NCBI GenBank assembly: GCA_950097015.1
Contig: CATNEN010000037.1
Span: forward strand, 1,550,001 to 1,614,000
Length of the DNA: 64,000 nt
From: Macrostomum hystrix
Taxonomy: Eukaryota > Animalia > Platyhelminthes
Direction of reading: 5' to 3'
Every line of letters starts with the position of its first letter. The stretch's first letter is position 1. The position numbers and the translations under genes are program-made. The notes beneath the pieces were generated by a model. It made no database searches and was not told the origin of the DNA. It was given only the letters and a program-made list of their open reading frames with translations. Positions 29,771 through 39,023 of this stretch are shown piece by piece.

Positions 29771-31572
29771 GCTATTAGGCCTTCATATCTTAAATTTATT
29801 GTTTAATTCAAGACAACAAATTTAAATTAGCATTTAACAATGAGCAAAGTTAAGTTTAAGAAGTAACTAAAATCTGGGCTTAAAAAGCTTATTAATGTAT
29901 AGGTCCTCGAATCTATGTTTTGAGTGTTTATTGTAATTGCTTGCTATTAGGCCCAATCCTATCATACCAGTAAGAATAAGCTAGTGATCAGGCATTCTGG
30001 CATCTAAGTTAGCAAATGCAAGTGTATTTTTTGTCTGTAGCTGCAATAAAGCATATATAAATGTTCAATGTTATCTGATTAATTTAAATTCAAATTATAT
30101 GTGAATTTACTAATACTCATTTCTTCACCACTAGCTTTTGCATACTAGGTGACTTGCAATTCAACTTGCAAGCTAAAAAATCTGTATTGTGAGATCACAA
30201 ATTTGAGCTACATCACACATTTTTACTACTCAGGAAAAATAATAAAGACAAAAAAATAACATGAATCTATAGGCCCAAAACTTAAATATTTAGTCACCTT
30301 GCTTTCCGTTTTTTAATCATTATTATTTAAATTTACTTTTTGAGCTTTATGCTTTTTCTTACTATTTAGCTAGTATTTATTTGTAACATTTCATATATTT
30401 CCAACACTCTATGTTTGTTTCTAACATGCAACACTTAGTCTTCTGCCTTTAGTTTATTTGAACAGCCATATCTAACAAATTCAATAGGTGTTATAATGAA
30501 GTTATCAGGCCAAGTGGTAGTCAATTAGTCCCCGACCGAAAATAAATGTCCTCTCAAAAACAGTAAGTGTGCCAGTTGTGCCACAAATATGCCCTTTGGC
30601 ACAGTTATAACTGTCTTTGTCTGTCCTGTTTGGCACAAGTGGCACAAATAACCTTTTGTACGATAATTGCCCATTGAAACCAATTGGCACACTTGGCACA
30701 CTTGTAACAAATGTGCCAGTTGTGCCACAGCTATGCCCTTTTGCACAGTTGTAAATGTCTTTGTCTGTCCCTCTTGGCACATTTAACATTGTTATTGCTA
30801 ATTGACCACGAAAACCAATTGGCACGTACTTGGCGCACTTGTAACAAATGTGCCCGTTGTGCCACAAATATGCTCTTTGGCACAGTTATAACTGTCTTTG
30901 TCTGTCCTCTTTGTGCTCACCAGGCATAGTAAACAAAGCTTATATTTTAGGTACGAAATATATAATTGACTGTTTGTTTGCCAGTACGAGCTATCTCGGC
31001 CTTGGCTTGTTATTTTTGCTCTCTTGCTGAATAGTTGGCTATAGACGAAATGTCGGGGGTGTGGGGGCAGAGCCCCCACTGGGGGTGTGGGGGCGAAGCC
31101 CCAACATGGTACTGCCATAGACAAATCATTAAGAAATCATTAAGAAAAAGAAAGAAAAGGAAGACTATACGTTTAATCGGCCTAGGCCGTTAAATGACTG
31201 GCTTAGGCCAGTTAAATGAAAATACACTGTGGAGATAGGCAACTAGCTGGGCCAAGCTGGGGATTAAATAAGGTTACATCACTGTTGCCTTATCAGACAA
31301 TCAGACAGAACGAATATTTTATTTAGGGAGTACATGATTCGTATTGAATATCTGCACACTAATCCAATTTATTGCAGTGCAACAAAACAATGCAGTGCTG
31401 CAAGTGCCACGCAACGGCAACTATTTTGTGCCACACGTGCACCATCACTGGGGACGTGTTGCTATGTGACGAGCATTACAATGCATACCACGTTCCAGCG
31501 ATGCGACACCTCACAAGCCGTCTACCTGCCGTGCCCGTGCATGGAGTGCCAGCAACGTCCATCGTCGCCACT

Positions 31573-31675
31573 GGTGGGGGAGCTTTCGCGACCCCGAGCG
31601 CGCCTGGCGCGCTTCCCAATGCTGCCGCCTTCACGTGGCGGGACCGTCCGGACATACCCCCGGCGAAGTGCAGCG
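31573..31675 (+). ncRNA. Putative HDV/CPEB3-like self-cleaving ribozyme at the LINE 5' end
   Basis: P2 GCUGC 31621-25 / GCAGC 31670-74; P3 GCC/GGC closing L3 UUCACGU 31630-36; GU 31646-47; P4 CCGG 31648-51 / CCGG 31660-63; J4/2 CGAA 31664-67. P1 must be split (GGU 31573-75 plus CCC 31615-17, pairing with GGGACC 31640-45). Confidence 0.7.
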
Positions 31676-31740
31676 CTCACCCTGGACATCGTCTGGGGAC
31701 AGGACACCTCGGGTTTTTCCCAGCTGGACCAGCCTCACCG

Positions 31741-31797
31741 GCTCACCTGGCCCAGCTGCTCCTCCGAGCCGGCGACGTGGAGACCAACCCTGGGCCA
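31741..31797 (+). other. 2A-like StopGo peptide AHLAQLLLRAGDVETNPGP
   Basis: Exact D-V-E-x-N-P-G-P consensus, in frame just upstream of the APE domain. Confidence 0.9.
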
Positions 31798-34700
31798 CCA
31801 ACGTCGTACTCATGCGGTGGCTGCAGCACTAACGTCCACAGCTTTCACATTTTACAACTTAACGCCGCCGGCCTCCGCGCCCGTAAGCTCGAACTCCTCC
31901 ATTTCCTCGAGGCCAAGTCCATCGATGTCGCCTGTGTTCAGGAGACGAATTTGACGGCGACCGGGTCCCTCCCAAGACTGCCGGGCTGGCAATTTGCCGC
32001 CTGCAGGGACCGTCGAGCCAATCGCGCTGGCGAGCCGGCGGAGACGCCGCACGGCGGAGTCTGCTTCCTGATCAAAGAAGGTATCGACTTCTCCGAGATC
32101 CAGATGCCACCCCCCAAGGCTGTCAACTCGGCCACGGAAGCCTCCGCGGTCACTATTCACGACCCGCGTATCGGCCGCCCACTCTCGATCATTAACCTCT
32201 ATATCCCACCGGTCCGTGCAGGAGACGGACGGGTCAGCGACTTCGAACCAGACTGGCTCCCATCCGGCCCCGACACCGTTATCCTCGGCGACATTAACGC
32301 GCACCACGGGATGTGGGACGAGAGCTGCGAGACCGACGACGCCCTGGGGACCGAGTTCGAAAACTGGGCCACGACGTTCGACTACGTCGCGCTTAACGAT
32401 GGCTCCTTCACCAGAATCAGCCCCAGAGGCCTGACCAGCGCCCCGGACGTGACCTTTGTCCCGGCCAACTGGCAAGACCGGATGACCTGGAAGACGGAGG
32501 CACACATCGGATCCGACCATCTCCCTATCGTTATCGAGATTCGAAACAGCTCCAAGAGGCCCCCTAAGCAGAAACGGGTGACCCGCTTCGCCTACCATAA
32601 GGCAGACTGGACCCTATTCCGCGAGCTCATTTCCGAAGAACTCAAGCATTGGCAGCATCGCCCACCACGCTCGGTCGCTGGTGCAACCGATAAACTGAAC
32701 CACGCCATCCGTTCAGCCGCTCGAGGAGCGATTCCGCAGGGCTCGCGCCGAGCCCCAGTAGCATGGTGGTGCCCTGAGGCCGAAGCTGCGTGCACCGCCA
32801 GACGTCAGGCCCTCGAAGCTCTCCGCACGGATCCTGACAATGACGAGCTCGCCGCGGCGTATCAAGCCGCGGGTGCTTTCGCCACCGCGTCCATCCGTAG
32901 GGCCAAGGAGGCACTCTGGCAAGAATTCATATCCGACAACTACAATAAACTGGACTCGGCCGCGATCTGGAGAATAATTCGAGTTCTCGACGGGCGGACA
33001 CCGGCGGCCTGAACATCCGCAGCCATCAAGGACTCGGCCAACCGCTGCGCCACCACGAACTCACAAAAGGCCAACCTTTTCTGTAGAGAGTACGCAACAA
33101 TCGCGCAACTTCCTAAAGACAAAGTGCGGGACCACACAGTCAAACTTGAGGCCAGAAGAGCCCTTGATGAGCCCTGTGCGTGCAACGGACAACGCCTGGG
33201 AATGTGTGCTGACTTCGACCTAGAGGCGCTCACCCAAGCCCTCCGCGCCATCCCGAGCCGGTCCGCCCCAGGGCTAGACGGGATTTCCAACTTGATGCTG
33301 AAGAATCTGCCGCCAAAGGGGATCGAGCTCCTCCTCTTCAACATCAACCTTTCTTGGCGTAGCGGCCAGTGTTGCGCTGCCTGGAAAATCGGCGACATCA
33401 GGACGATACACAAGCCTAGGAAAAGCCCGGACGCGACCTCCAGCTACCGCCCTATCTGCCTCGGAAAGTCGCGGAACGTCTGGTTAACGAACGCCTCACA
33501 CACTACCTGGAGTCCGAGAACCTCATCCACCCGGCCCAGGCCGGCTTCCGCCGCGGTCGCTCTACCGAAGAGCAGATTGCCGCGGCATCCCAGTACGTCT
33601 TCGACGGCTTCCAGAAGAAAAAACCGGCAAACCGTACAGCGATGCTGTTTGGGGACTTCTCACATGCATACGAGTGCATGTGGCGACAGGCCCTCATCGC
33701 TAAGTTACGCCGTAAGAAAGTCCCGACCTGCACGCGCCGCTGGATTCACTCGCATATCTCCGATCGACGTGCCATTGTGACCTGGGACGGCAATCAGAGC
33801 CCCCAACGCCTCTTCCCTGAGGGCCTCCCCCAAGGCTCCGTCATCGCCCCGACTCTGTGGACGGTGTTCGTCGATGACCTGTTGGAGGATGCCCCAGAGG
33901 ACATCTTCTCTCTGGCGTACGCCGACGATACGACCTTTGGCGCACAAGGCACGAATTTGAAGACCTGTGAAGCAAGACTGCAAAGCGCGGCGAACTGGCT
34001 CGTCGTGTGGTGCACGACTTGGAAAGTCGACCTGAACAAATCCAAAACAGTCGTCACCTACTTCTCCCTCGACCCACGTGAGACAAACGGCAAGGCGAGA
34101 CCAAATATCAGACTCGGAGACATGCCAGCCCCATTCGAGGAACACCCCAAGATGCTGGGCGTGTACCTCGATTCACAGCTCACGTTCCGCCACCATGCGG
34201 CGGTCCAAAAGCGCAACCTGCAGAAGCGGACAGGCGCCCTGAGGTGCCTTGCTGGTCGAGACTGGGGGCGCGACCCGAGATCTCTCAGACAGCTTTACCG
34301 CACCTACGCGGAAGCGGCGGTCCTACACGGCGCCTCCTCTTGGATGAGCTTTGCGTCCGACGCCTGCCGCCGGGAAGTTGAGACCCAGCACCTCGCCGCA
34401 GCGCGCGTTATCTCGGGGTGCTGCCGATCCACCCCGACTGCCGCGCTCCTCAAAGAGGCCGGACTGGCTCCACTCAACACCTCGGCTACGGCCGCTGCGG
34501 CTACGCTGATGGAGAAAACCCGGCGAGCAAGACAACAGACACCGCTCAGAACGCTGGCCGAACTCGACGTTCAACCGAGAATCCGCGCTCACGGCAACCA
34601 CGGCGATTTCAGACGCAACTGGAGGACGGAGGCCAACGGCCTGATCGCCCGCGCGGGCCTCGCGGGATCCAAGCGCGAACCTGACAACGTGCCACCGCCT

Positions 34701-36605
34701 CCCCTATCGCCTAACGACAGGATCCACTTCGCAGCGGAACTCGCCAAACCGACCAACCGGGAGGATCCCCCGCACGTCAGACGCCAAGCCGCACTGGAGA
34801 CGCTGGACCGGCTTCCGGAACCCGCCTTGGAACTCCGGACCGATGGCTCGGCCTCCGGAGGCACCAATAGAGGCAGATCCGGTGCGGCCCTGTTTATCCG
34901 CGGAGCCGCGCCAATCTACCTGACTGCTCCAGCGGGCGCGTTCAGCTCTTCTTTTAGGGCGGAGGAGTGTGCCCTCCGCATTGGTCTCCTCGCAGCCCTG
35001 GAGCGCGTCCCATGGCCCGGTACGGCAGAACTGCGTTGCGCCACTGATTCGCAGGCCCTCATCCGATCGCTCGAACAAGGCACGCACTCTCACCTGTCCC
35101 CCTGCGGCCGGGACATCTGGCGCCTCCTCCTCAAAGTCCCTGCGGACCACCACGTGACTATCCAATGGGTCCCAGGACACTGTGACCTGAGGCGCAACGA
35201 TCTGGCGGACAACCTCGCAAAAGACGCCGCCAGACTCCCACAAGACCAAGCGGAAATCGACCTAAACAGTGCCAAGTCCGCGATCCGCCGCACACTGGCC
35301 GCCGAGGCTCGCGCTGCCTACGAAGCGGACCCACACTGCCGGACGCACCGCGCTGCCTTCCGCGAAGACCGCAGGTCCGAGGCGACTCTCAGCAGACGCG
35401 AGTTGATCACGCTAGTGCAACTTCGCACGGGCCACTCGCCTCTGCTGGCCCAGTACCGCCACCGGATTGACCAAGAACAGCCCGCGTCCTGCGGGCACTG
35501 CGGACACCAGGAGGAGGACCTGAAGCATGTGATGCTGGAATGCCCAGCTCACGCCCAGACCCGCAACCGCGTCCTCGGCCCTAACCCGACGCTGGCCATC
35601 CTATCCGACGACGGCCCCCGTGTCCTGTCCTATCTCTAGGCGATAGGGTTGCTGACCCGACGCCCGGACCTGCACGGCCAGGAACTTCTAACTAACTAAC
35701 TGGCGGCCCTGGGACCGAAATCCTCGACGCAGGTCGAGAAAGCGCTATTGCGGCTGGTGTAGAAGTGTCTCATGGGAGAGTCAGTGACTCTCCCATGCAC
35801 GAAGTGCCAGCAACTGCCAATGGTCCGTCGCCGGTTGACGTCCGGAATGCATACCACGCCGCTATGTGTGTCCACATCCGGCGACAGGAGCCATATCAGT
35901 GCCTTGTAAGGCCGCCCGCCGTAAGCGTGATAGACAACGTCGTGTGGCGGGAGCGTTACAGTCAGCTCATACGGATAATAAAACAGCAACGCGAAGCTGG
36001 CTGCGCTTTTACTTGCTTCGATTTCGCAGTGCGTTCGACTGCCAATCACCTGGTGGCATGCGGACAGCTGCGGCGCCTGGCTATGCACGAGCAGCCTCCA
36101 AACCTGCCAACCGAGCTGGCAGATGCGCTCGCGGAAGCAAGCAGTTCTGTGGCTGCCGCTCGTGCAGACCAGTCAATGCAGAAGCCGTCATTGACACCGG
36201 TTTCCGTGCGGGCCTCGCATACCGCTGCATTGTGCTAGCGGTGCTAGCAATCGAGTTGCAATATTACTCGCTGATGTAGACTCATGTGCAAACCTACACT
36301 GTTACATGTTGACAGAATATCTCTTGTATTGCTGTTGTATCCGGCGGTACTGTTGTAATAGGGGCGTTTATATGAAAGGCTCGAGTTTTCGTTGTATGTC
36401 GAAGATCGGTTGCGATCGGAGTTAGTTAGACCGTAGGCACAGACAGAGCAGTTCTGCCTGTCTACCCTCTGTACCCACGAGTCACGAGAATGTTTATATA
36501 AGTTTATATATAAGTTTATACAATAGAAACAACAATTTCAACAATCTCGCACGGACGGACTCCGGGAAATGACAATGTATTCGTTGTTCCCATTCCAGTC
36601 AACAC

Positions 36606-39023
36606 ATGGCGCCTACGCGTAGGCTACGAGATGAAGTGCGAAAGGTCAACCACACAGAAGTCGTACCAGATGCGGTGCGCAAAATTATTCAGAGGCAACA
36701 TCGAAAGCATCGAGACCAATGTCACAATGCTGATCCACCGACACCTGAGCAAGCCGAGAGGTCTACAGTTACAACCACATCGCGACCGATGCCACAGCAT
36801 ATCAATGACATGCCAATCTATCCAGGTGCGCGTCGAACATACATCGAGACGGCGCTATTGCTAACAGAGTTTGCCGAGACCGAGTCATTGACGCGCAAAG
36901 GAACAGACCGTTTATTGCGTCTACTGGACGAGCTGTTGCCCGTCGGGAGCCACTTCCCACGCTCTGTGTATTATCTGGATAGTGTCATTGACACTACCGG
37001 ATGCAACACAGAATGTTACGTTGTGTGTCGCAGCTGCAAGGCCGCCACAGAAGCTCCCGAAGCGACCCGAGACGGTTGTCGACAGTGTCGGATAGCGTTC
37101 GCTGACATCAACTTGAACCGGTACTGGCAGTTTGACATCGGTCGACAACTGCAGTCCGCACTCGAATGTCGCTCGTTCCTTCGGCACGTCACCTTCCCGG
37201 TGGACATGACTGCCGAACCCGACACCATTCACTTTACTAACAGCGAGAAGTACGCCGAATTCAAGCGCGCATGCGGTACCCGGCTGAACGACAGGGCGGA
37301 CCTAACTTACACGCTGAACATAGATGGGTTCGCCATGTACAAGTCATCCCGCTATGAGATTTGTCCCATCTACCTGAGCGTCAACGAAGTGTCCGTTACA
37401 CACAAGTCCCGCTTCCTCGTTGTGTGTGGCCTATGGGGTAGCAAGACGAAGATGCCGACGGCTGCCTACCTTCCTCTACTGCGGCTGCAATTGAACAAAA
37501 TTCGGACTGATGGGGTGTCGTACGTCAATGAGGGGCGGCACTCTGTCATGCGGTTTCATGTGCACTGTGTCATCATGGACGCACCACAGCGTCAGGCAGC
37601 GCTGGAGCTGTTAATGTACAATGGCACATTCGGGTGTGACAAGTGCTACATTGCAACAAAGCGCCAGGCAAATGTTCGAGGCAACGCTAGATACTACCCA
37701 GTCGCCATTGACCAAACAACAGTGCGTGCATTGCTGGACCATCATGTGGGTCAAGTCGAACTGCGAAATCTGGAGGACACGGTTTCACTGGCGAATATCA
37801 AGGCGCCGCGAGACCTTCATCTGTTCGGTGTTAAAGGCGTCTCTGAATTCAGTCGAGTCATCGGGTTCGACTATATTGCCGACTGCCCGCCATGTTTCCT
37901 CCACCAAGCACTAAGTGGACTGGCACGCTGGTTACTATCGCAGTGGTTTCTTATTGGACACGAGAAGCCGGACCCAAGCTTGACCAGGCCAAATCTGTAC
38001 AATGCAATTGACGTCATTGACGGCAGGTTGCGGCGTGTTACAATGCCAAGCAGTGTGCAACGGCGACACCCCCGTTCACTACGGGAACTGAAGTTCATGC
38101 GCGGCCACGAGTTTGCCTGCTGGTTGTTTGCATTTGGCCCCATGGTTCTGGCTGATGGTCCGCTGCACAGGGACTACTACAACCTTTTTTTGTTGTTGTC
38201 CTCCGCTCTTTTCTGGCTCAGCTACCAGAACACCAGCAGGAATTACATGGCGCGGATTCAGGTCACCTTGGACCATTTCTATCGCGACCTCGGAGTCCTC
38301 TATTCCAATCGAGCACTGACGTACAACGCACACTCAGTGTGTCGTCATATGACGGCTGCTGTGTTGCGATTGGGTCCTACTGCCTCGTTGTCTGCTGGAT
38401 TGTTCGAATCCGAACATCGCAAAACCCGCGCACGTGTCCACGGCAACTCTCTGGTCGACAAGGAGCTGGTGATGCAGATCGAGTTCGACATTGGTCGCAG
38501 AGAGATGCGACATCAACGGCGCATGCCAACCCTCTCAAAATTGGCCAACAACGACCGTCATTTGACGGTCGGCTGTCTACGTGTGATTCCATTCTATCAC
38601 GCAGGTGCCGGACAATACAAAAGAGTGATCCTGCCGTGTGGCATGGTACTTCAGCCGTGCGGGACACTTGACGAGCAGCGACTCGGCACGTCAACATCTT
38701 CGTGTTTCGTCGGACTCAAATGCGACGATCCGGAGAAATTCGTGTTCGCTAGAATCGAGTCCATTAGCGCGTCGGAAGCGCTGGGTGTGGCCTTTGAGTG
38801 TCGGATCGTGCCAGTCATCGAGCCCGATGAGTCACCTTTCGTCGCGTACTCCGGCACTGACGAGTGCTGTCGCGCTGCACATGTTCGTCGTCTATCCGTC
38901 CGTCCATTCGATGTGTTTGATGGCGAGTTGACTTCTGTTGGCTTCTCCTCTATTGCTGGACCGTGCGTCGTCAGTGACACGCACATCAGCCTACTGCCGA
39001 GTGCCCAACTTTCATATTCATAA
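36606..39023 (+). CDS. EnSpm/CMC DDE transposase, 805 aa, uninterrupted
   Basis: YTLNIDGFAMYKSS..ICPIYLSVNE, IMDAPQR...YNGTFGCDKC, CFLH (C/D-x2-H motif), LFESEH; N-terminal CxxC pairs. Confidence 0.9.
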   Translation: MAPTRRLRDEVRKVNHTEVVPDAVRKIIQRQHRKHRDQCHNADPPTPEQAERSTVTTTSRPMPQHINDMPIYPGARRTYIETALLLTEFAETESLTRKGTDRLLRLLDELLPVGSHFPRSVYYLDSVIDTTGCNTECYVVCRSCKAATEAPEATRDGCRQCRIAFADINLNRYWQFDIGRQLQSALECRSFLRHVTFPVDMTAEPDTIHFTNSEKYAEFKRACGTRLNDRADLTYTLNIDGFAMYKSSRYEICPIYLSVNEVSVTHKSRFLVVCGLWGSKTKMPTAAYLPLLRLQLNKIRTDGVSYVNEGRHSVMRFHVHCVIMDAPQRQAALELLMYNGTFGCDKCYIATKRQANVRGNARYYPVAIDQTTVRALLDHHVGQVELRNLEDTVSLANIKAPRDLHLFGVKGVSEFSRVIGFDYIADCPPCFLHQALSGLARWLLSQWFLIGHEKPDPSLTRPNLYNAIDVIDGRLRRVTMPSSVQRRHPRSLRELKFMRGHEFACWLFAFGPMVLADGPLHRDYYNLFLLLSSALFWLSYQNTSRNYMARIQVTLDHFYRDLGVLYSNRALTYNAHSVCRHMTAAVLRLGPTASLSAGLFESEHRKTRARVHGNSLVDKELVMQIEFDIGRREMRHQRRMPTLSKLANNDRHLTVGCLRVIPFYHAGAGQYKRVILPCGMVLQPCGTLDEQRLGTSTSSCFVGLKCDDPEKFVFARIESISASEALGVAFECRIVPVIEPDESPFVAYSGTDECCRAAHVRRLSVRPFDVFDGELTSVGFSSIAGPCVVSDTHISLLPSAQLSYS

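What the first reader, a model, noticed from the sequence alone, without database searches (positions are those of the whole stretch)
31573..31675. HDV/CPEB3-like ribozyme with an unusual split P1 at the exact 5' end of the LINE
Seen: P2, P3, L3 (UUCACGU), GU, P4 and J4/2 CGAA are in canonical order, with C31664 at the catalytic position. P1 forms only if GGU (31573-75) and CCC (31615-17) jointly pair with GGGACC (31640-45), with two hairpins looped out (31576-95; AGCGCGC-CUG-GCGCGCU 31597-613). The predicted +1 G (31573) coincides with the insertion boundary deduced independently from the host frame. Known: L3 and J4/2 match the human CPEB3 ribozyme, and HDV-like ribozymes process the 5' ends of R2, L1Tc/Ingi and other LINEs. 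Inference: a four-way-junction P1 variant that standard descriptors would probably miss.
Basis: partly seen in the sequence, partly recalled or inferred. Interest (0 to 1): 0.85.

Follow-up and report, generated by a model that had tools for sequence, protein, structure and literature searches.

The report
LINE ribozyme with interrupted P1 helix
The first 100 bases of this jumping gene (a LINE retrotransposon) are a genuine relative of the hepatitis-delta-type self-cutting RNAs, but the helix that sets the cut site is interrupted by two extra hairpins, an arrangement I did not find described and that only a bench test can show to be active.

Summary
Observation confirmed. An HDV-type core descriptor with L3 = UYCNCGN matches once in the 64-kb window, at this spot (0.2 expected by chance).

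The LINE's 5' end at G31573 is independently confirmed. Public DNA contigs contain the empty site, and at least three to four other insertions with different flanks begin at 31571-31573.

Related 2A-peptide LINEs from metagenome contigs carry canonical HDV-like folds at the same place, 100-150 nt before the 2A motif. These have a contiguous 6-7 bp P1 and covarying P1, P2 and P4.

This family has no contiguous P1. Only GGU (31573-75) plus CCC (31615-17) pair with GGGACC (31640-45), across two flush hairpins. That four-way junction is the predicted minimum-energy fold of the isolated 5' domain and arises in 0.5% of shuffles.

GCUUCC(C) (31611-17) aligns with the relatives' P1 strand. This suggests a 5' extension that moved the cut site upstream.

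Activity is untested. Copies are about 99% identical, so there is no within-family covariation, and no RNA runs were found.

The scan found this before on other copies (s1-355503, s1-388061).

Verdict: real HDV-like ribozyme core; split P1 plausible (about 0.5); a new variant of a known kind.

The parts
31573..31575 (+). P1a 5' strand GGU. G31573 is the predicted +1 (cleavage 31572/31573) and the first base of the LINE.
   Evidence: Pairs with ACC 31643-45. Other copies with different flanks begin here.
31576..31595 (+). Inserted hairpin A: 4 G-C pairs, tandem G.A/A.G, 2 G-C pairs, UUUC loop.
   Evidence: Folds. A diverged subfamily has a different hairpin (GGGAGG..CCUCCC) at the same place (loose ends).
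31597..31613 (+). Inserted hairpin B, AGCGCGC-CUG-GCGCGCU. G31596.U31614 can add an eighth pair, leaving a junction with no unpaired bases.
   Evidence: It is retained in the diverged subfamily.
31615..31617 (+). P1b 5' strand CCC. With the preceding GCUU it aligns to the contiguous P1 strand GCUUCC of relatives L001 and L026.
   Evidence: Pairs with GGG 31640-42. MAFFT alignment.
31618..31626 (+). J1/2 AAU (31618-20), P2 5' strand GCUGC (31621-25) and C31626.
31627..31639 (+). P3 GCC/GGC enclosing L3 UUCACGU.
   Evidence: The only part matched by the model R1 built from relatives.
31640..31647 (+). P1 3' strand GGGACC (31640-45), then J1/4 GU. Possible P1.1 pairs are C31634-G31646 and A31633-U31647.
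   Evidence: inspection.
31648..31663 (+). P4, CCGG/CCGG with an 8-nt loop. Other copies differ only in the loop (31654 A>T, 31655 T>C). The subfamily has loop GUUCGC.
31664..31675 (+). J4/2 CGAAGU with C31664 at the catalytic position, then P2 3' strand GCAGC(G).
   Evidence: The subfamily reads CCAAGU, which still fits CNRA.
31573..35701 (+). The LINE copy: APE (Exo_endo_phos), RT, RNase H and a C-terminal Cys/His motif. It is frameshifted near 33010-33120 and near 33640. The tail is (AACT)3 at 35690-35701.
31774..31797 (+). 2A motif DVETNPGP, 100 nt after the ribozyme, in a frame that is open and AUG-less from +1.

Best explanation
Bases 31573-31675 encode an HDV-like self-cleaving ribozyme. 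It frees the LINE RNA from read-through host transcripts by cutting just 5' of G31573.

The core is standard: P2, P3, L3, P1.1, P4 and J4/2, with C31664 as the general acid. The P1 helix, which positions the scissile phosphate, is built from two 3-bp halves on one continuous 3' strand (GGGACC). These halves are GGU at the RNA's very 5' end and CCC 39 nt later. The two intervening hairpins would stack on each other in a four-way junction, so the two P1 halves can stack into a quasi-continuous 6-bp helix.

The likely origin is a 5' extension of an ancestral ribozyme whose contiguous P1 strand was GCUUCC, followed by changes in P1' that moved the cut site upstream.

After cleavage, the 5'-OH RNA with its AUG-less open leader would be translated. 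The 2A peptide would then shed the leader from the APE-RT protein.

Shown: the sequence elements, the 5' end of the copies, and homology to canonical ribozymes. Inferred: junction folding, cleavage, the evolutionary route, and the translation step.
For: - The core descriptor is unique in the window.
- At least three to four independent insertions start at G31573, and empty-site contigs exist.
- Five related LINEs (L001, L026, L002, L025, L024), and tentatively L023 and L022, have canonical HDV-like folds. Their P1, P2 and P4 sequences differ but stay complementary. The folds end 103-150 nt before the 2A motif, against 100 nt here.
- In L001, L002, L023, L025 and L026 the core descriptor's only match in the whole locus is that site.
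- The four-way junction is the minimum-energy fold of the isolated 5' domain, at -29.1 to -29.9 kcal/mol against -24 to -25 for the hairpins alone.
- Only 0.5% of shuffles reproduce +1 pairing with full P1' occupancy.
- A diverged subfamily keeps 31607-31651 (41 of 45 bases), the P4 stem, the CNRA J4/2 and hairpin B. It replaces hairpin A with a different hairpin at the same junction position.
- GCUUCC aligns with the relatives' P1 strand, which fits the cleavage-site-shift model proposed for R2 (PMC3774820).
Against: - No cleavage or RNA 5'-end data exist, and no RNA runs hold the stretch.
- No Rfam family reaches its threshold.
- The model built from two relatives sees only P3/L3 here.
- Each P1 half is only 3 bp.
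- A 4-bp UCCC/GGGA pairing is nearly isoenergetic.
- P3 can extend to CCGCC/GGCGG and compete for G31640-41.
- The whole-region fold energy is not unusual (z = -0.49).
- P1 mismatches are reported to impair HDV-like ribozymes (PMC3774820), and an interrupted P1 has no tested precedent that I found.
- Copies are about 99% identical, so there is no covariation in the P1 halves.
- The first bases of the subfamily were not visible.
Confidence: 0.5

Rival explanations
1. The HDV-like core is inherited, but in this family it no longer cleaves, or cleaves negligibly, because P1 is broken. The uniform 5' end at G31573 is a transcription start set by an internal promoter in the 5' extension. The core persists because the family is young, because it is also coding leader, or because the fold helps cap-independent translation.
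For: - There is no contiguous P1.
- Copies are about 99% identical, so little time has passed for decay.
- The ribozyme region lies in the open reading frame.
- L1Tc's first 77 nt act as both promoter and ribozyme (PMC3383444).
- P1 defects weaken HDV-like ribozymes (PMC3774820).
Against: - Complementarity of the first three bases of the element to the outer half of P1', flush with two closed hairpins, occurs in 0.5% of shuffles.
- The diverged subfamily conserves the core, the catalytic C and the hairpin architecture, while the neighbouring sequence has diverged beyond 80% likeness.
- I saw no initiator-like motif at +1, which reads GGTGGGGG (inspection only).
Confidence: 0.33
2. The ribozyme is active but cuts inside the element, using a contiguous P1. 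The candidates are the ancestral register GCUUCC (31611-16)/GGGACC with one C.C mismatch, the 4-bp UCCC/GGGA, or UUUCGC (31584-89)/GCGGGA with a shifted P3.
For: - The Rfam HDV-F-prausnitzii alignment takes GCUUCCC as P1.
- The descriptor finds the 31584 register.
- The 4-bp register is -28.7 kcal/mol against -29.1 for the split P1.
Against: - Cleavage there would strip 11-41 nt that every full-length copy retains, and no copies were seen starting at 31584, 31611 or 31614.
- The ancestral register requires melting hairpin B (-19.5 kcal/mol).
- The 31584 register destroys the conserved L3 and P3, and its UUUCGC is absent from the subfamily.
- Four base pairs is below the 6-7 bp P1 typical of the family (PMC4908430, PMC3774820).
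Confidence: 0.1
3. Chance resemblance: a G+C-rich 5' UTR that happens to fit the HDV descriptor.
For: - Structure-only descriptors match hundreds of times in the window.
- No Rfam hit reaches threshold.
Against: - With the L3 consensus the match is unique.
- It lies at the LINE's first base.
- It is at the same distance from the 2A motif as the canonical ribozymes of relatives.
Confidence: 0.03

Closest known systems
HDV-like ribozymes at the 5' ends of non-LTR retrotransposons (R2, R4, Dong, baggins, L1Tc; PMC3774820, PMC3185411, PMC3383444; Ruminski et al. 2011, cited from PMC13725137, not held in the library)
   Same: Position at the first base of the element. Order of P1-P2-P3-L3-P1'-P4-J4/2-P2'. 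A 3-bp P3. A C at the start of J4/2. Presumed role in 5' processing of read-through transcripts and in translation of an uncapped RNA. As in L1Tc, it is followed by a 2A peptide and a single APE-RT-RNaseH ORF.
   Different: Those have one contiguous 6-7 bp P1. Extra sequence, up to hundreds of nt, sits in J1/2 or P4. Here 39 nt sit inside the P1 5' strand.
Canonical HDV-like folds in related 2A-LINEs found here (L001 250-378, L026 374-472, L002 1397-1478, L025 92-160, L024 83-150)
   Same: Same LINE group by APE similarity (35-50% amino-acid identity). Same distance to the 2A motif. L3 is UUCACGU, UUCUCGU or similar, and J4/2 fits CNRA. The P1 strand GCUUCC of L001 and L026 aligns with 31611-16.
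   Different: They have a contiguous P1 with J1/2 of 1-3 nt, and no 5' hairpins.
Mammalian CPEB3 ribozyme
   Same: L3 UUCACGU (mouse primer in PMC10919898). From my own knowledge, J1/4 GU and J4/2 CGAA as well.
   Different: CPEB3 is intronic, single-copy, mammalian and has a contiguous P1. No match to the Rfam CPEB3 model at E up to 10. This is a resemblance, not membership.
drz-Agam-2-1 and other large HDV-like ribozymes with a structured J1/2 domain (P1.2) (PMC4908430)
   Same: A stable helical peripheral domain on the 5' side between the P1 and P2 strands. Such a domain can accelerate cleavage by holding P1 and P2 together.
   Different: There the domain follows a complete P1. Here it divides P1 into two 3-bp halves, giving a four-way rather than a three-way junction.

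Membership tests
HDV-like ribozyme (nested double pseudoknot) | Strand order P1-J1/2-P2-P3-L3-P3'-P1'-J1/4-P4-J4/2-P2' | tested here: met
   Manual parse and descriptor. All segments are in order within 31573-31675.
HDV-like ribozyme (nested double pseudoknot) | One contiguous P1 of 6-7 bp starting at the cleavage site | tested here: not met
   Only a 3+3 bp P1 split by 39 nt is available. The contiguous alternatives are 4 bp, or 6 bp with a C.C mismatch, and they start inside the element.
HDV-like ribozyme (nested double pseudoknot) | A 3-bp P3 closing a 7-8 nt L3 of type UYCNCGN | tested here: met
   GCC-UUCACGU-GGC. Unique in the window when combined with P2, P4 and J4/2.
HDV-like ribozyme (nested double pseudoknot) | Catalytic C opening J4/2 (CNRA), directly after P4 and before P2' | tested here: met
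   C31664 GAA. The subfamily has CCAA and relatives have CCAA or CAAA.
HDV-like ribozyme (nested double pseudoknot) | P1.1 of 1-2 bp between L3 and J1/4 | tested here: inconclusive
   C31634-G31646 and A31633-U31647 are possible on inspection. Nothing tests them.
HDV-like ribozyme (nested double pseudoknot) | Score at or above the gathering threshold of an Rfam HDV-type model | tested here: not met
   No gathering hit. The best is HDV-F-prausnitzii at 12.8 bits against a threshold of 44, E = 7.8.
HDV-like ribozyme (nested double pseudoknot) | Mg2+-dependent self-cleavage giving a 5'-OH at +1 | not testable with these tools
   No RNA runs hold the stretch. Logan contigs cannot show RNA ends.
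LINE 5'-end ribozyme | Genomic copies begin at the predicted +1 whatever the flank | tested here: met
   Loose ends before 31571, 31572 and 31573 carry four different flanks. The empty site is also seen.
L1Tc/Ingi-type organisation | Single ORF with an N-terminal 2A, then APE, RT and RNase H, with the ribozyme in the first ~100 nt | tested here: met
   Pfam Exo_endo_phos, RVT_1 and RNase_H. 2A at 31774. Clade assignment by RT phylogeny was not done.
CPEB3 ribozyme family | Match to the family model, in a mammalian intronic context | tested here: not met
   No CPEB3 hit at E up to 10. The context is a LINE 5' end.

The most novel reading that the evidence does not exclude
An HDV-like ribozyme can work with its substrate helix P1 interrupted by a two-hairpin insertion, in a perfect four-way junction whose P1 halves stack. 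This state arose when a 5' extension shifted the cleavage site upstream. It would define a structural subclass that current descriptors and covariance models miss, and a natural example of cleavage-site migration in a dispersed (not rDNA-specific) LINE.
Probability: 0.45. Interest if true: 0.7.

Novelty: new variant of a known kind. Interest (0 to 1): 0.55.

Why it matters
HDV-like ribozymes are found by descriptors and covariance models that demand a contiguous 6-7 bp P1. If an interrupted P1 is active, such searches under-count the family.

It would also change what is thought necessary to position the scissile phosphate. The rule of one continuous substrate helix would be relaxed to two stacked 3-bp halves held by a junction.

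It would give a worked example of how a retrotransposon's cut site and 5' end migrate. It would add a compact peripheral domain of interest to ribozyme engineering.

The family-level result stands on its own as a smaller, useful annotation. Metazoan-type 2A-LINEs carry HDV-like ribozymes 100-150 nt before the 2A peptide, as L1Tc does.

Tried and rejected
- **Rfam.** At gathering and at E up to 10 it gave nothing usable.
- **Phage megablast** was irrelevant and found nothing.
- **Word-indexed protein searches.** The 479-aa and 126-aa N-terminal pieces found nothing. The host species' copies appear not to be in that collection at those lengths.
- **Exact-pattern scans with the core.** The 16-mer in viral contigs and the 18-mer in metagenome contigs gave only chance matches in unrelated, mostly bacterial-looking contexts.
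- **No RNA runs** hold the stretch. The single read-laying run used Logan contigs, which cannot show RNA ends.
- **MAFFT alignments** of the ribozymes were not structurally consistent.
- **Covariance model R1**, built from two relatives, was too narrow. It found L023 and L024 weakly and, in the window, only P3/L3 at E = 9.5. I therefore give no formal covariation statistics, only the helix table.
- **L024's 'TTWRD' leader** looked like the same core but has a different L3.
- **L020 and L021** gave no clean descriptor parse.
- **Rejected P1 alternatives:**
  - UUUCGC/GCGGGA (cut at 31584) breaks the conserved L3 and is absent from the subfamily.
  - GCUUCC/GGGACC (cut at 31611) must melt hairpin B (-19.5 kcal/mol) and has a C.C mismatch.
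  - UCCC/GGGA is only 4 bp.
  - All three contradict the copies' 5' ends.
- **Not attempted:** identifying the host species or assigning the LINE clade by RT phylogeny.

Full report
**What is in the sequence**

From, the stretch 31573-31675 reads, in order:
- GGU
- a 20-nt hairpin (31576-95): four G-C pairs, a tandem G.A/A.G, two G-C pairs and a UUUC loop
- G
- a 17-nt hairpin AGCGCGC-CUG-GCGCGCU (31597-613)
- U, then CCC (31615-17)
- AAU
- GCUGC (P2), then C
- GCC-UUCACGU-GGC (P3/L3)
- GGGACC (31640-45)
- GU
- CCGG-ACAUACCC-CCGG (P4)
- CGAAGU, with C31664 first
- GCAGC (P2')

GGU pairs with ACC and CCC pairs with GGG of the one hexamer GGGACC.

**Is the core more than chance?**

Structure alone is not specific. 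A P2/P3/P4/J4-2 descriptor matches about 260 times in the window and about 178 times in shuffles. When L3 = UYCNCGN is also required, the only match on either strand of the 64 kb is this one. Twenty shuffles gave a mean of 0.2.

Rfam gives no hit at gathering thresholds. At E up to 10 it gives only HDV-F-prausnitzii (12.8 bits, E = 7.8) over 31611-31675, with GCUUCCC taken as an imperfect P1.

**The element and its 5' end**

Downstream lie:
- a frame open from +1 with no AUG
- a 2A motif, DVETNPGP, at 31774
- APE, RT and RNase H domains and a Cys/His motif
- frameshifts near 33010-33120 and near 33640
- an (AACT)3 tail ending at 35701

ACTGG occurs at both junctions, so the host frame by itself leaves the boundary ambiguous by up to five bases.

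Public DNA contigs settle it.
- Three runs contain the empty site (...GCCACTGG then CGGCCCTGGGACC...).
- Contigs with four different upstream flanks join the element at 31571, 31572 and 31573 (the last from two flank types).
- The common start is G31573.
- One such copy is identical over 390 nt except at three positions. Two of these lie in the P4 loop (31654 and 31655); the third is at 31847, outside the ribozyme. The family is therefore young and uniform.

**A diverged subfamily**

Other contigs match only 31607-31651, with 4 differences in 45 bases, and then run on unlike.
- Upstream they read ...UCGGGAGGGUCGGCCUCCCGGAGCGCGCUU.
- Downstream they read GUUCGCCCGGCCAAGUGCAGCCACC....

This subfamily keeps hairpin B, CCC, P2, P3/L3, P1', the P4 stem (with a different loop), a CNRA J4/2 (CCAA) and P2'. 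In place of hairpin A it has a different hairpin (C)GGGAGG-GUCGG-CCUCCC(G). That hairpin is preceded by U and followed by the same G linker.

This is the only covariation-like evidence for the inserted domain. The first bases of that subfamily lay beyond the 30 letters shown, so its P1a could not be read.

**Relatives**

An exhaustive protein search with the N-terminal 479 aa found 5739 relatives. Many carry 2A motifs, and the best is 50% identical. I fetched the DNA of ten of them and scanned the region upstream of the 2A with an HDV descriptor.

| Locus | P1 | J1/2 (nt) | L3 |
|---|---|---|---|
| L001 | UGCUUCC/GGAAGUG | 2 | UUCACGUC |
| L026 | GCUUCC/GGAAGC | 2 | UUCUCGU |
| L002 | GCUGGGC/GCCCGGU | 1 | UUCACGU |
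| L025 | GCGAGCC/GGCCCGU (one mismatch) | 3 | CUUCACGC |
| L024 | GCUGGCC/GGCCGGC | 1 | CAGAUCCUC |

L023 (one P1 mismatch, J1/2 of 11 nt) and L022 (J1/2 of 121 nt) fit less cleanly.

P1, P2 and P4 differ in sequence between lineages but stay complementary. J4/2 is CCAA, CAAA or CAGA. The fold ends 103-150 nt before the 2A motif, against 100 nt in the window.

In L001, L002, L023, L025 and L026 the core descriptor's only match in the whole locus is that site. The background was about 6 chance hits in 71 kb.

The window's core is therefore a member of a lineage-wide 5' ribozyme. This is the arrangement known from L1Tc: ribozyme in the first 77 nt, then 2A (PMC3185411, PMC3383444, PMC3708506). 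The 2A paper on metazoan LINEs does not mention ribozymes.

**The P1 problem**

All the relatives listed above have a contiguous P1. The window's family does not. The alternatives I could find are these.

1. **Split GGU+CCC/GGGACC.**
   - In the isolated 5' domain with P1' attached, it is the minimum-energy structure: -29.9 kcal/mol as a dimer and -29.1 with a linker.
   - With G31596.U31614 paired, it is a junction with no unpaired bases.
   - The hairpins alone give -24 to -25 kcal/mol.
2. **UCCC/GGGA, 4 bp**, at -28.7 kcal/mol. This is nearly equal in energy but shorter than any P1 described: 6-7 bp is typical (PMC4908430, PMC3774820).
3. **GCUUCC (31611-16)/GGGACC** with a C.C mismatch. 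This must melt hairpin B (-19.5 kcal/mol).
4. **UUUCGC (31584-89)/GCGGGA** with a shifted P3. This destroys the conserved L3, and its 5' strand is absent from the subfamily.

Alternatives 2 to 4 would cut inside the element and remove 11-41 nt that all full-length copies keep. No copies were seen starting there. Only alternative 1 places the cut at the observed 5' end.

In 3000 shuffles of the 48-nt 5' part, 0.5% gave a fold with +1 paired to the last P1' base and all six P1' bases paired.

**Origin**

MAFFT aligns the window's GCUUCCC-AAU-GCUGC-C-GCC-UUCACGU with L001 and L026's GCUUCC-UG-UG(C/U)G(A/G)C-C-ACC-UUC(A/U)CGU. So 31611-16 is probably the ancestral contiguous P1 strand. P1' has changed from GGAAGC-like to GGGACC.

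A 5' extension of about 38 nt, plus changes in P1' that favour an upstream partner, is the route Eickbush and colleagues proposed for shifts of the R2 cleavage site (PMC3774820). Here the new P1 would be a composite of a new outer half and the old inner half. This is inference.

**What is not shown**

- There is no cleavage assay and no RNA 5'-end data. No RNA runs hold the stretch.
- There is no covariation in the P1 halves.
- The whole-region fold energy is ordinary (z = -0.49), and P3 can extend to compete for G31640-41.
- P1 mismatches weaken HDV-like ribozymes (PMC3774820).
- Structured domains are known in J1/2 after a complete P1 (P1.2 of drz-Agam-2-1, PMC4908430). I found no paper describing an insertion inside P1.
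- The main rival is that the core is inherited but no longer cleaves and the 5' end is a transcription start. I cannot exclude it.

**Earlier notes of this scan**

Other readers flagged the same architecture on other copies (s1-355503, s1-388061). A follow-up on s1-355503 reached the same reading. These notes are not independent evidence. My tests here were made on this copy and on relatives that I fetched myself.

**Verdict**

- The HDV-like core and its position at the LINE's first base are well supported (about 0.9).
- The claim that the interrupted P1 is functional is plausible but unproven (about 0.5).
- If true, it is a new structural variant of a known ribozyme class.

Noticed in passing
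window 31573-31797: The reading frame is open from the first base of the LINE through the ribozyme to the 2A motif, with no AUG. The leader residues FTWRD and AKCSAH are simply L3/P1' and J4/2/P2' read as codons. L002's leader (AKASAH) shows the same effect. The gene call for P0006 starts at a GTG inside the ribozyme.
   Followed up: partly
window 31596-31601 and 31673-31678: GAGCGC can pair with GCGCUC just after P2'. The unconstrained minimum-energy fold of 31573-31680 uses this pairing instead of hairpin B and P2. It may be an alternative, inactive conformer, or it may be chance in GC-rich sequence.
   Followed up: no
window 31572-31707 (read-laying run X3): Summed contig depth over the first ~130 nt of the LINE (about 1100-1800) is two to three times that of the following kilobase (about 490-580). 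This may mean other elements or subfamilies share the ribozyme 5' end, as NARTc and RIME share Pr77 with L1Tc and ingi. Contig depth is a poor measure, so this is only a hint.
   Followed up: no
window 31570-31574 and 35699-35703; tail 35690-35701: ACTGG is present at both junctions, and the tail is (AACT)3. Three of four independent insertions have T at -1. This is compatible with a target nick at a tail-like ACT, or with a 3-nt duplication.
   Followed up: partly
L021 227-5278 (protein P0002): A related 2A-LINE ORF of 1683 aa carries a Pfam OTU (PF02338) hit between the RT and RNase H hits.
   Followed up: no
L001 about 530-700 and L026 about 600-720: The two closest relatives have a Cys-rich, PHD-like stretch (C..C......C..C..WWH..C) between a degenerate 2A (DIHPHPGP in L001; the L026 motif was not translated) and the APE domain. 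This resembles the 2A-PHD-APE layout noted for some CR1/Crack elements in PMC3708506.
   Followed up: no
L022 107-289: The best HDV-like parse has a 121-nt J1/2 between a 7-bp P1 (CGAGGCC/GGCUUCG) and P2. If real, large J1/2 insertions also occur in this LINE group.
   Followed up: partly
L001 218-256: A tandem duplication of the P1-containing 5' end (CTTGCTTCCTGTGCGACC repeated) offers two or three possible P1 strands for one core. It resembles the duplicated-P1 intermediates in the R2 cleavage-site-shift model.
   Followed up: no
window 36606-39023: An intact 805-aa ORF with no Pfam hit at E up to 0.001. Another first-stage note reads it as the EnSpm transposase of the host element into which this LINE inserted.
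   Followed up: no
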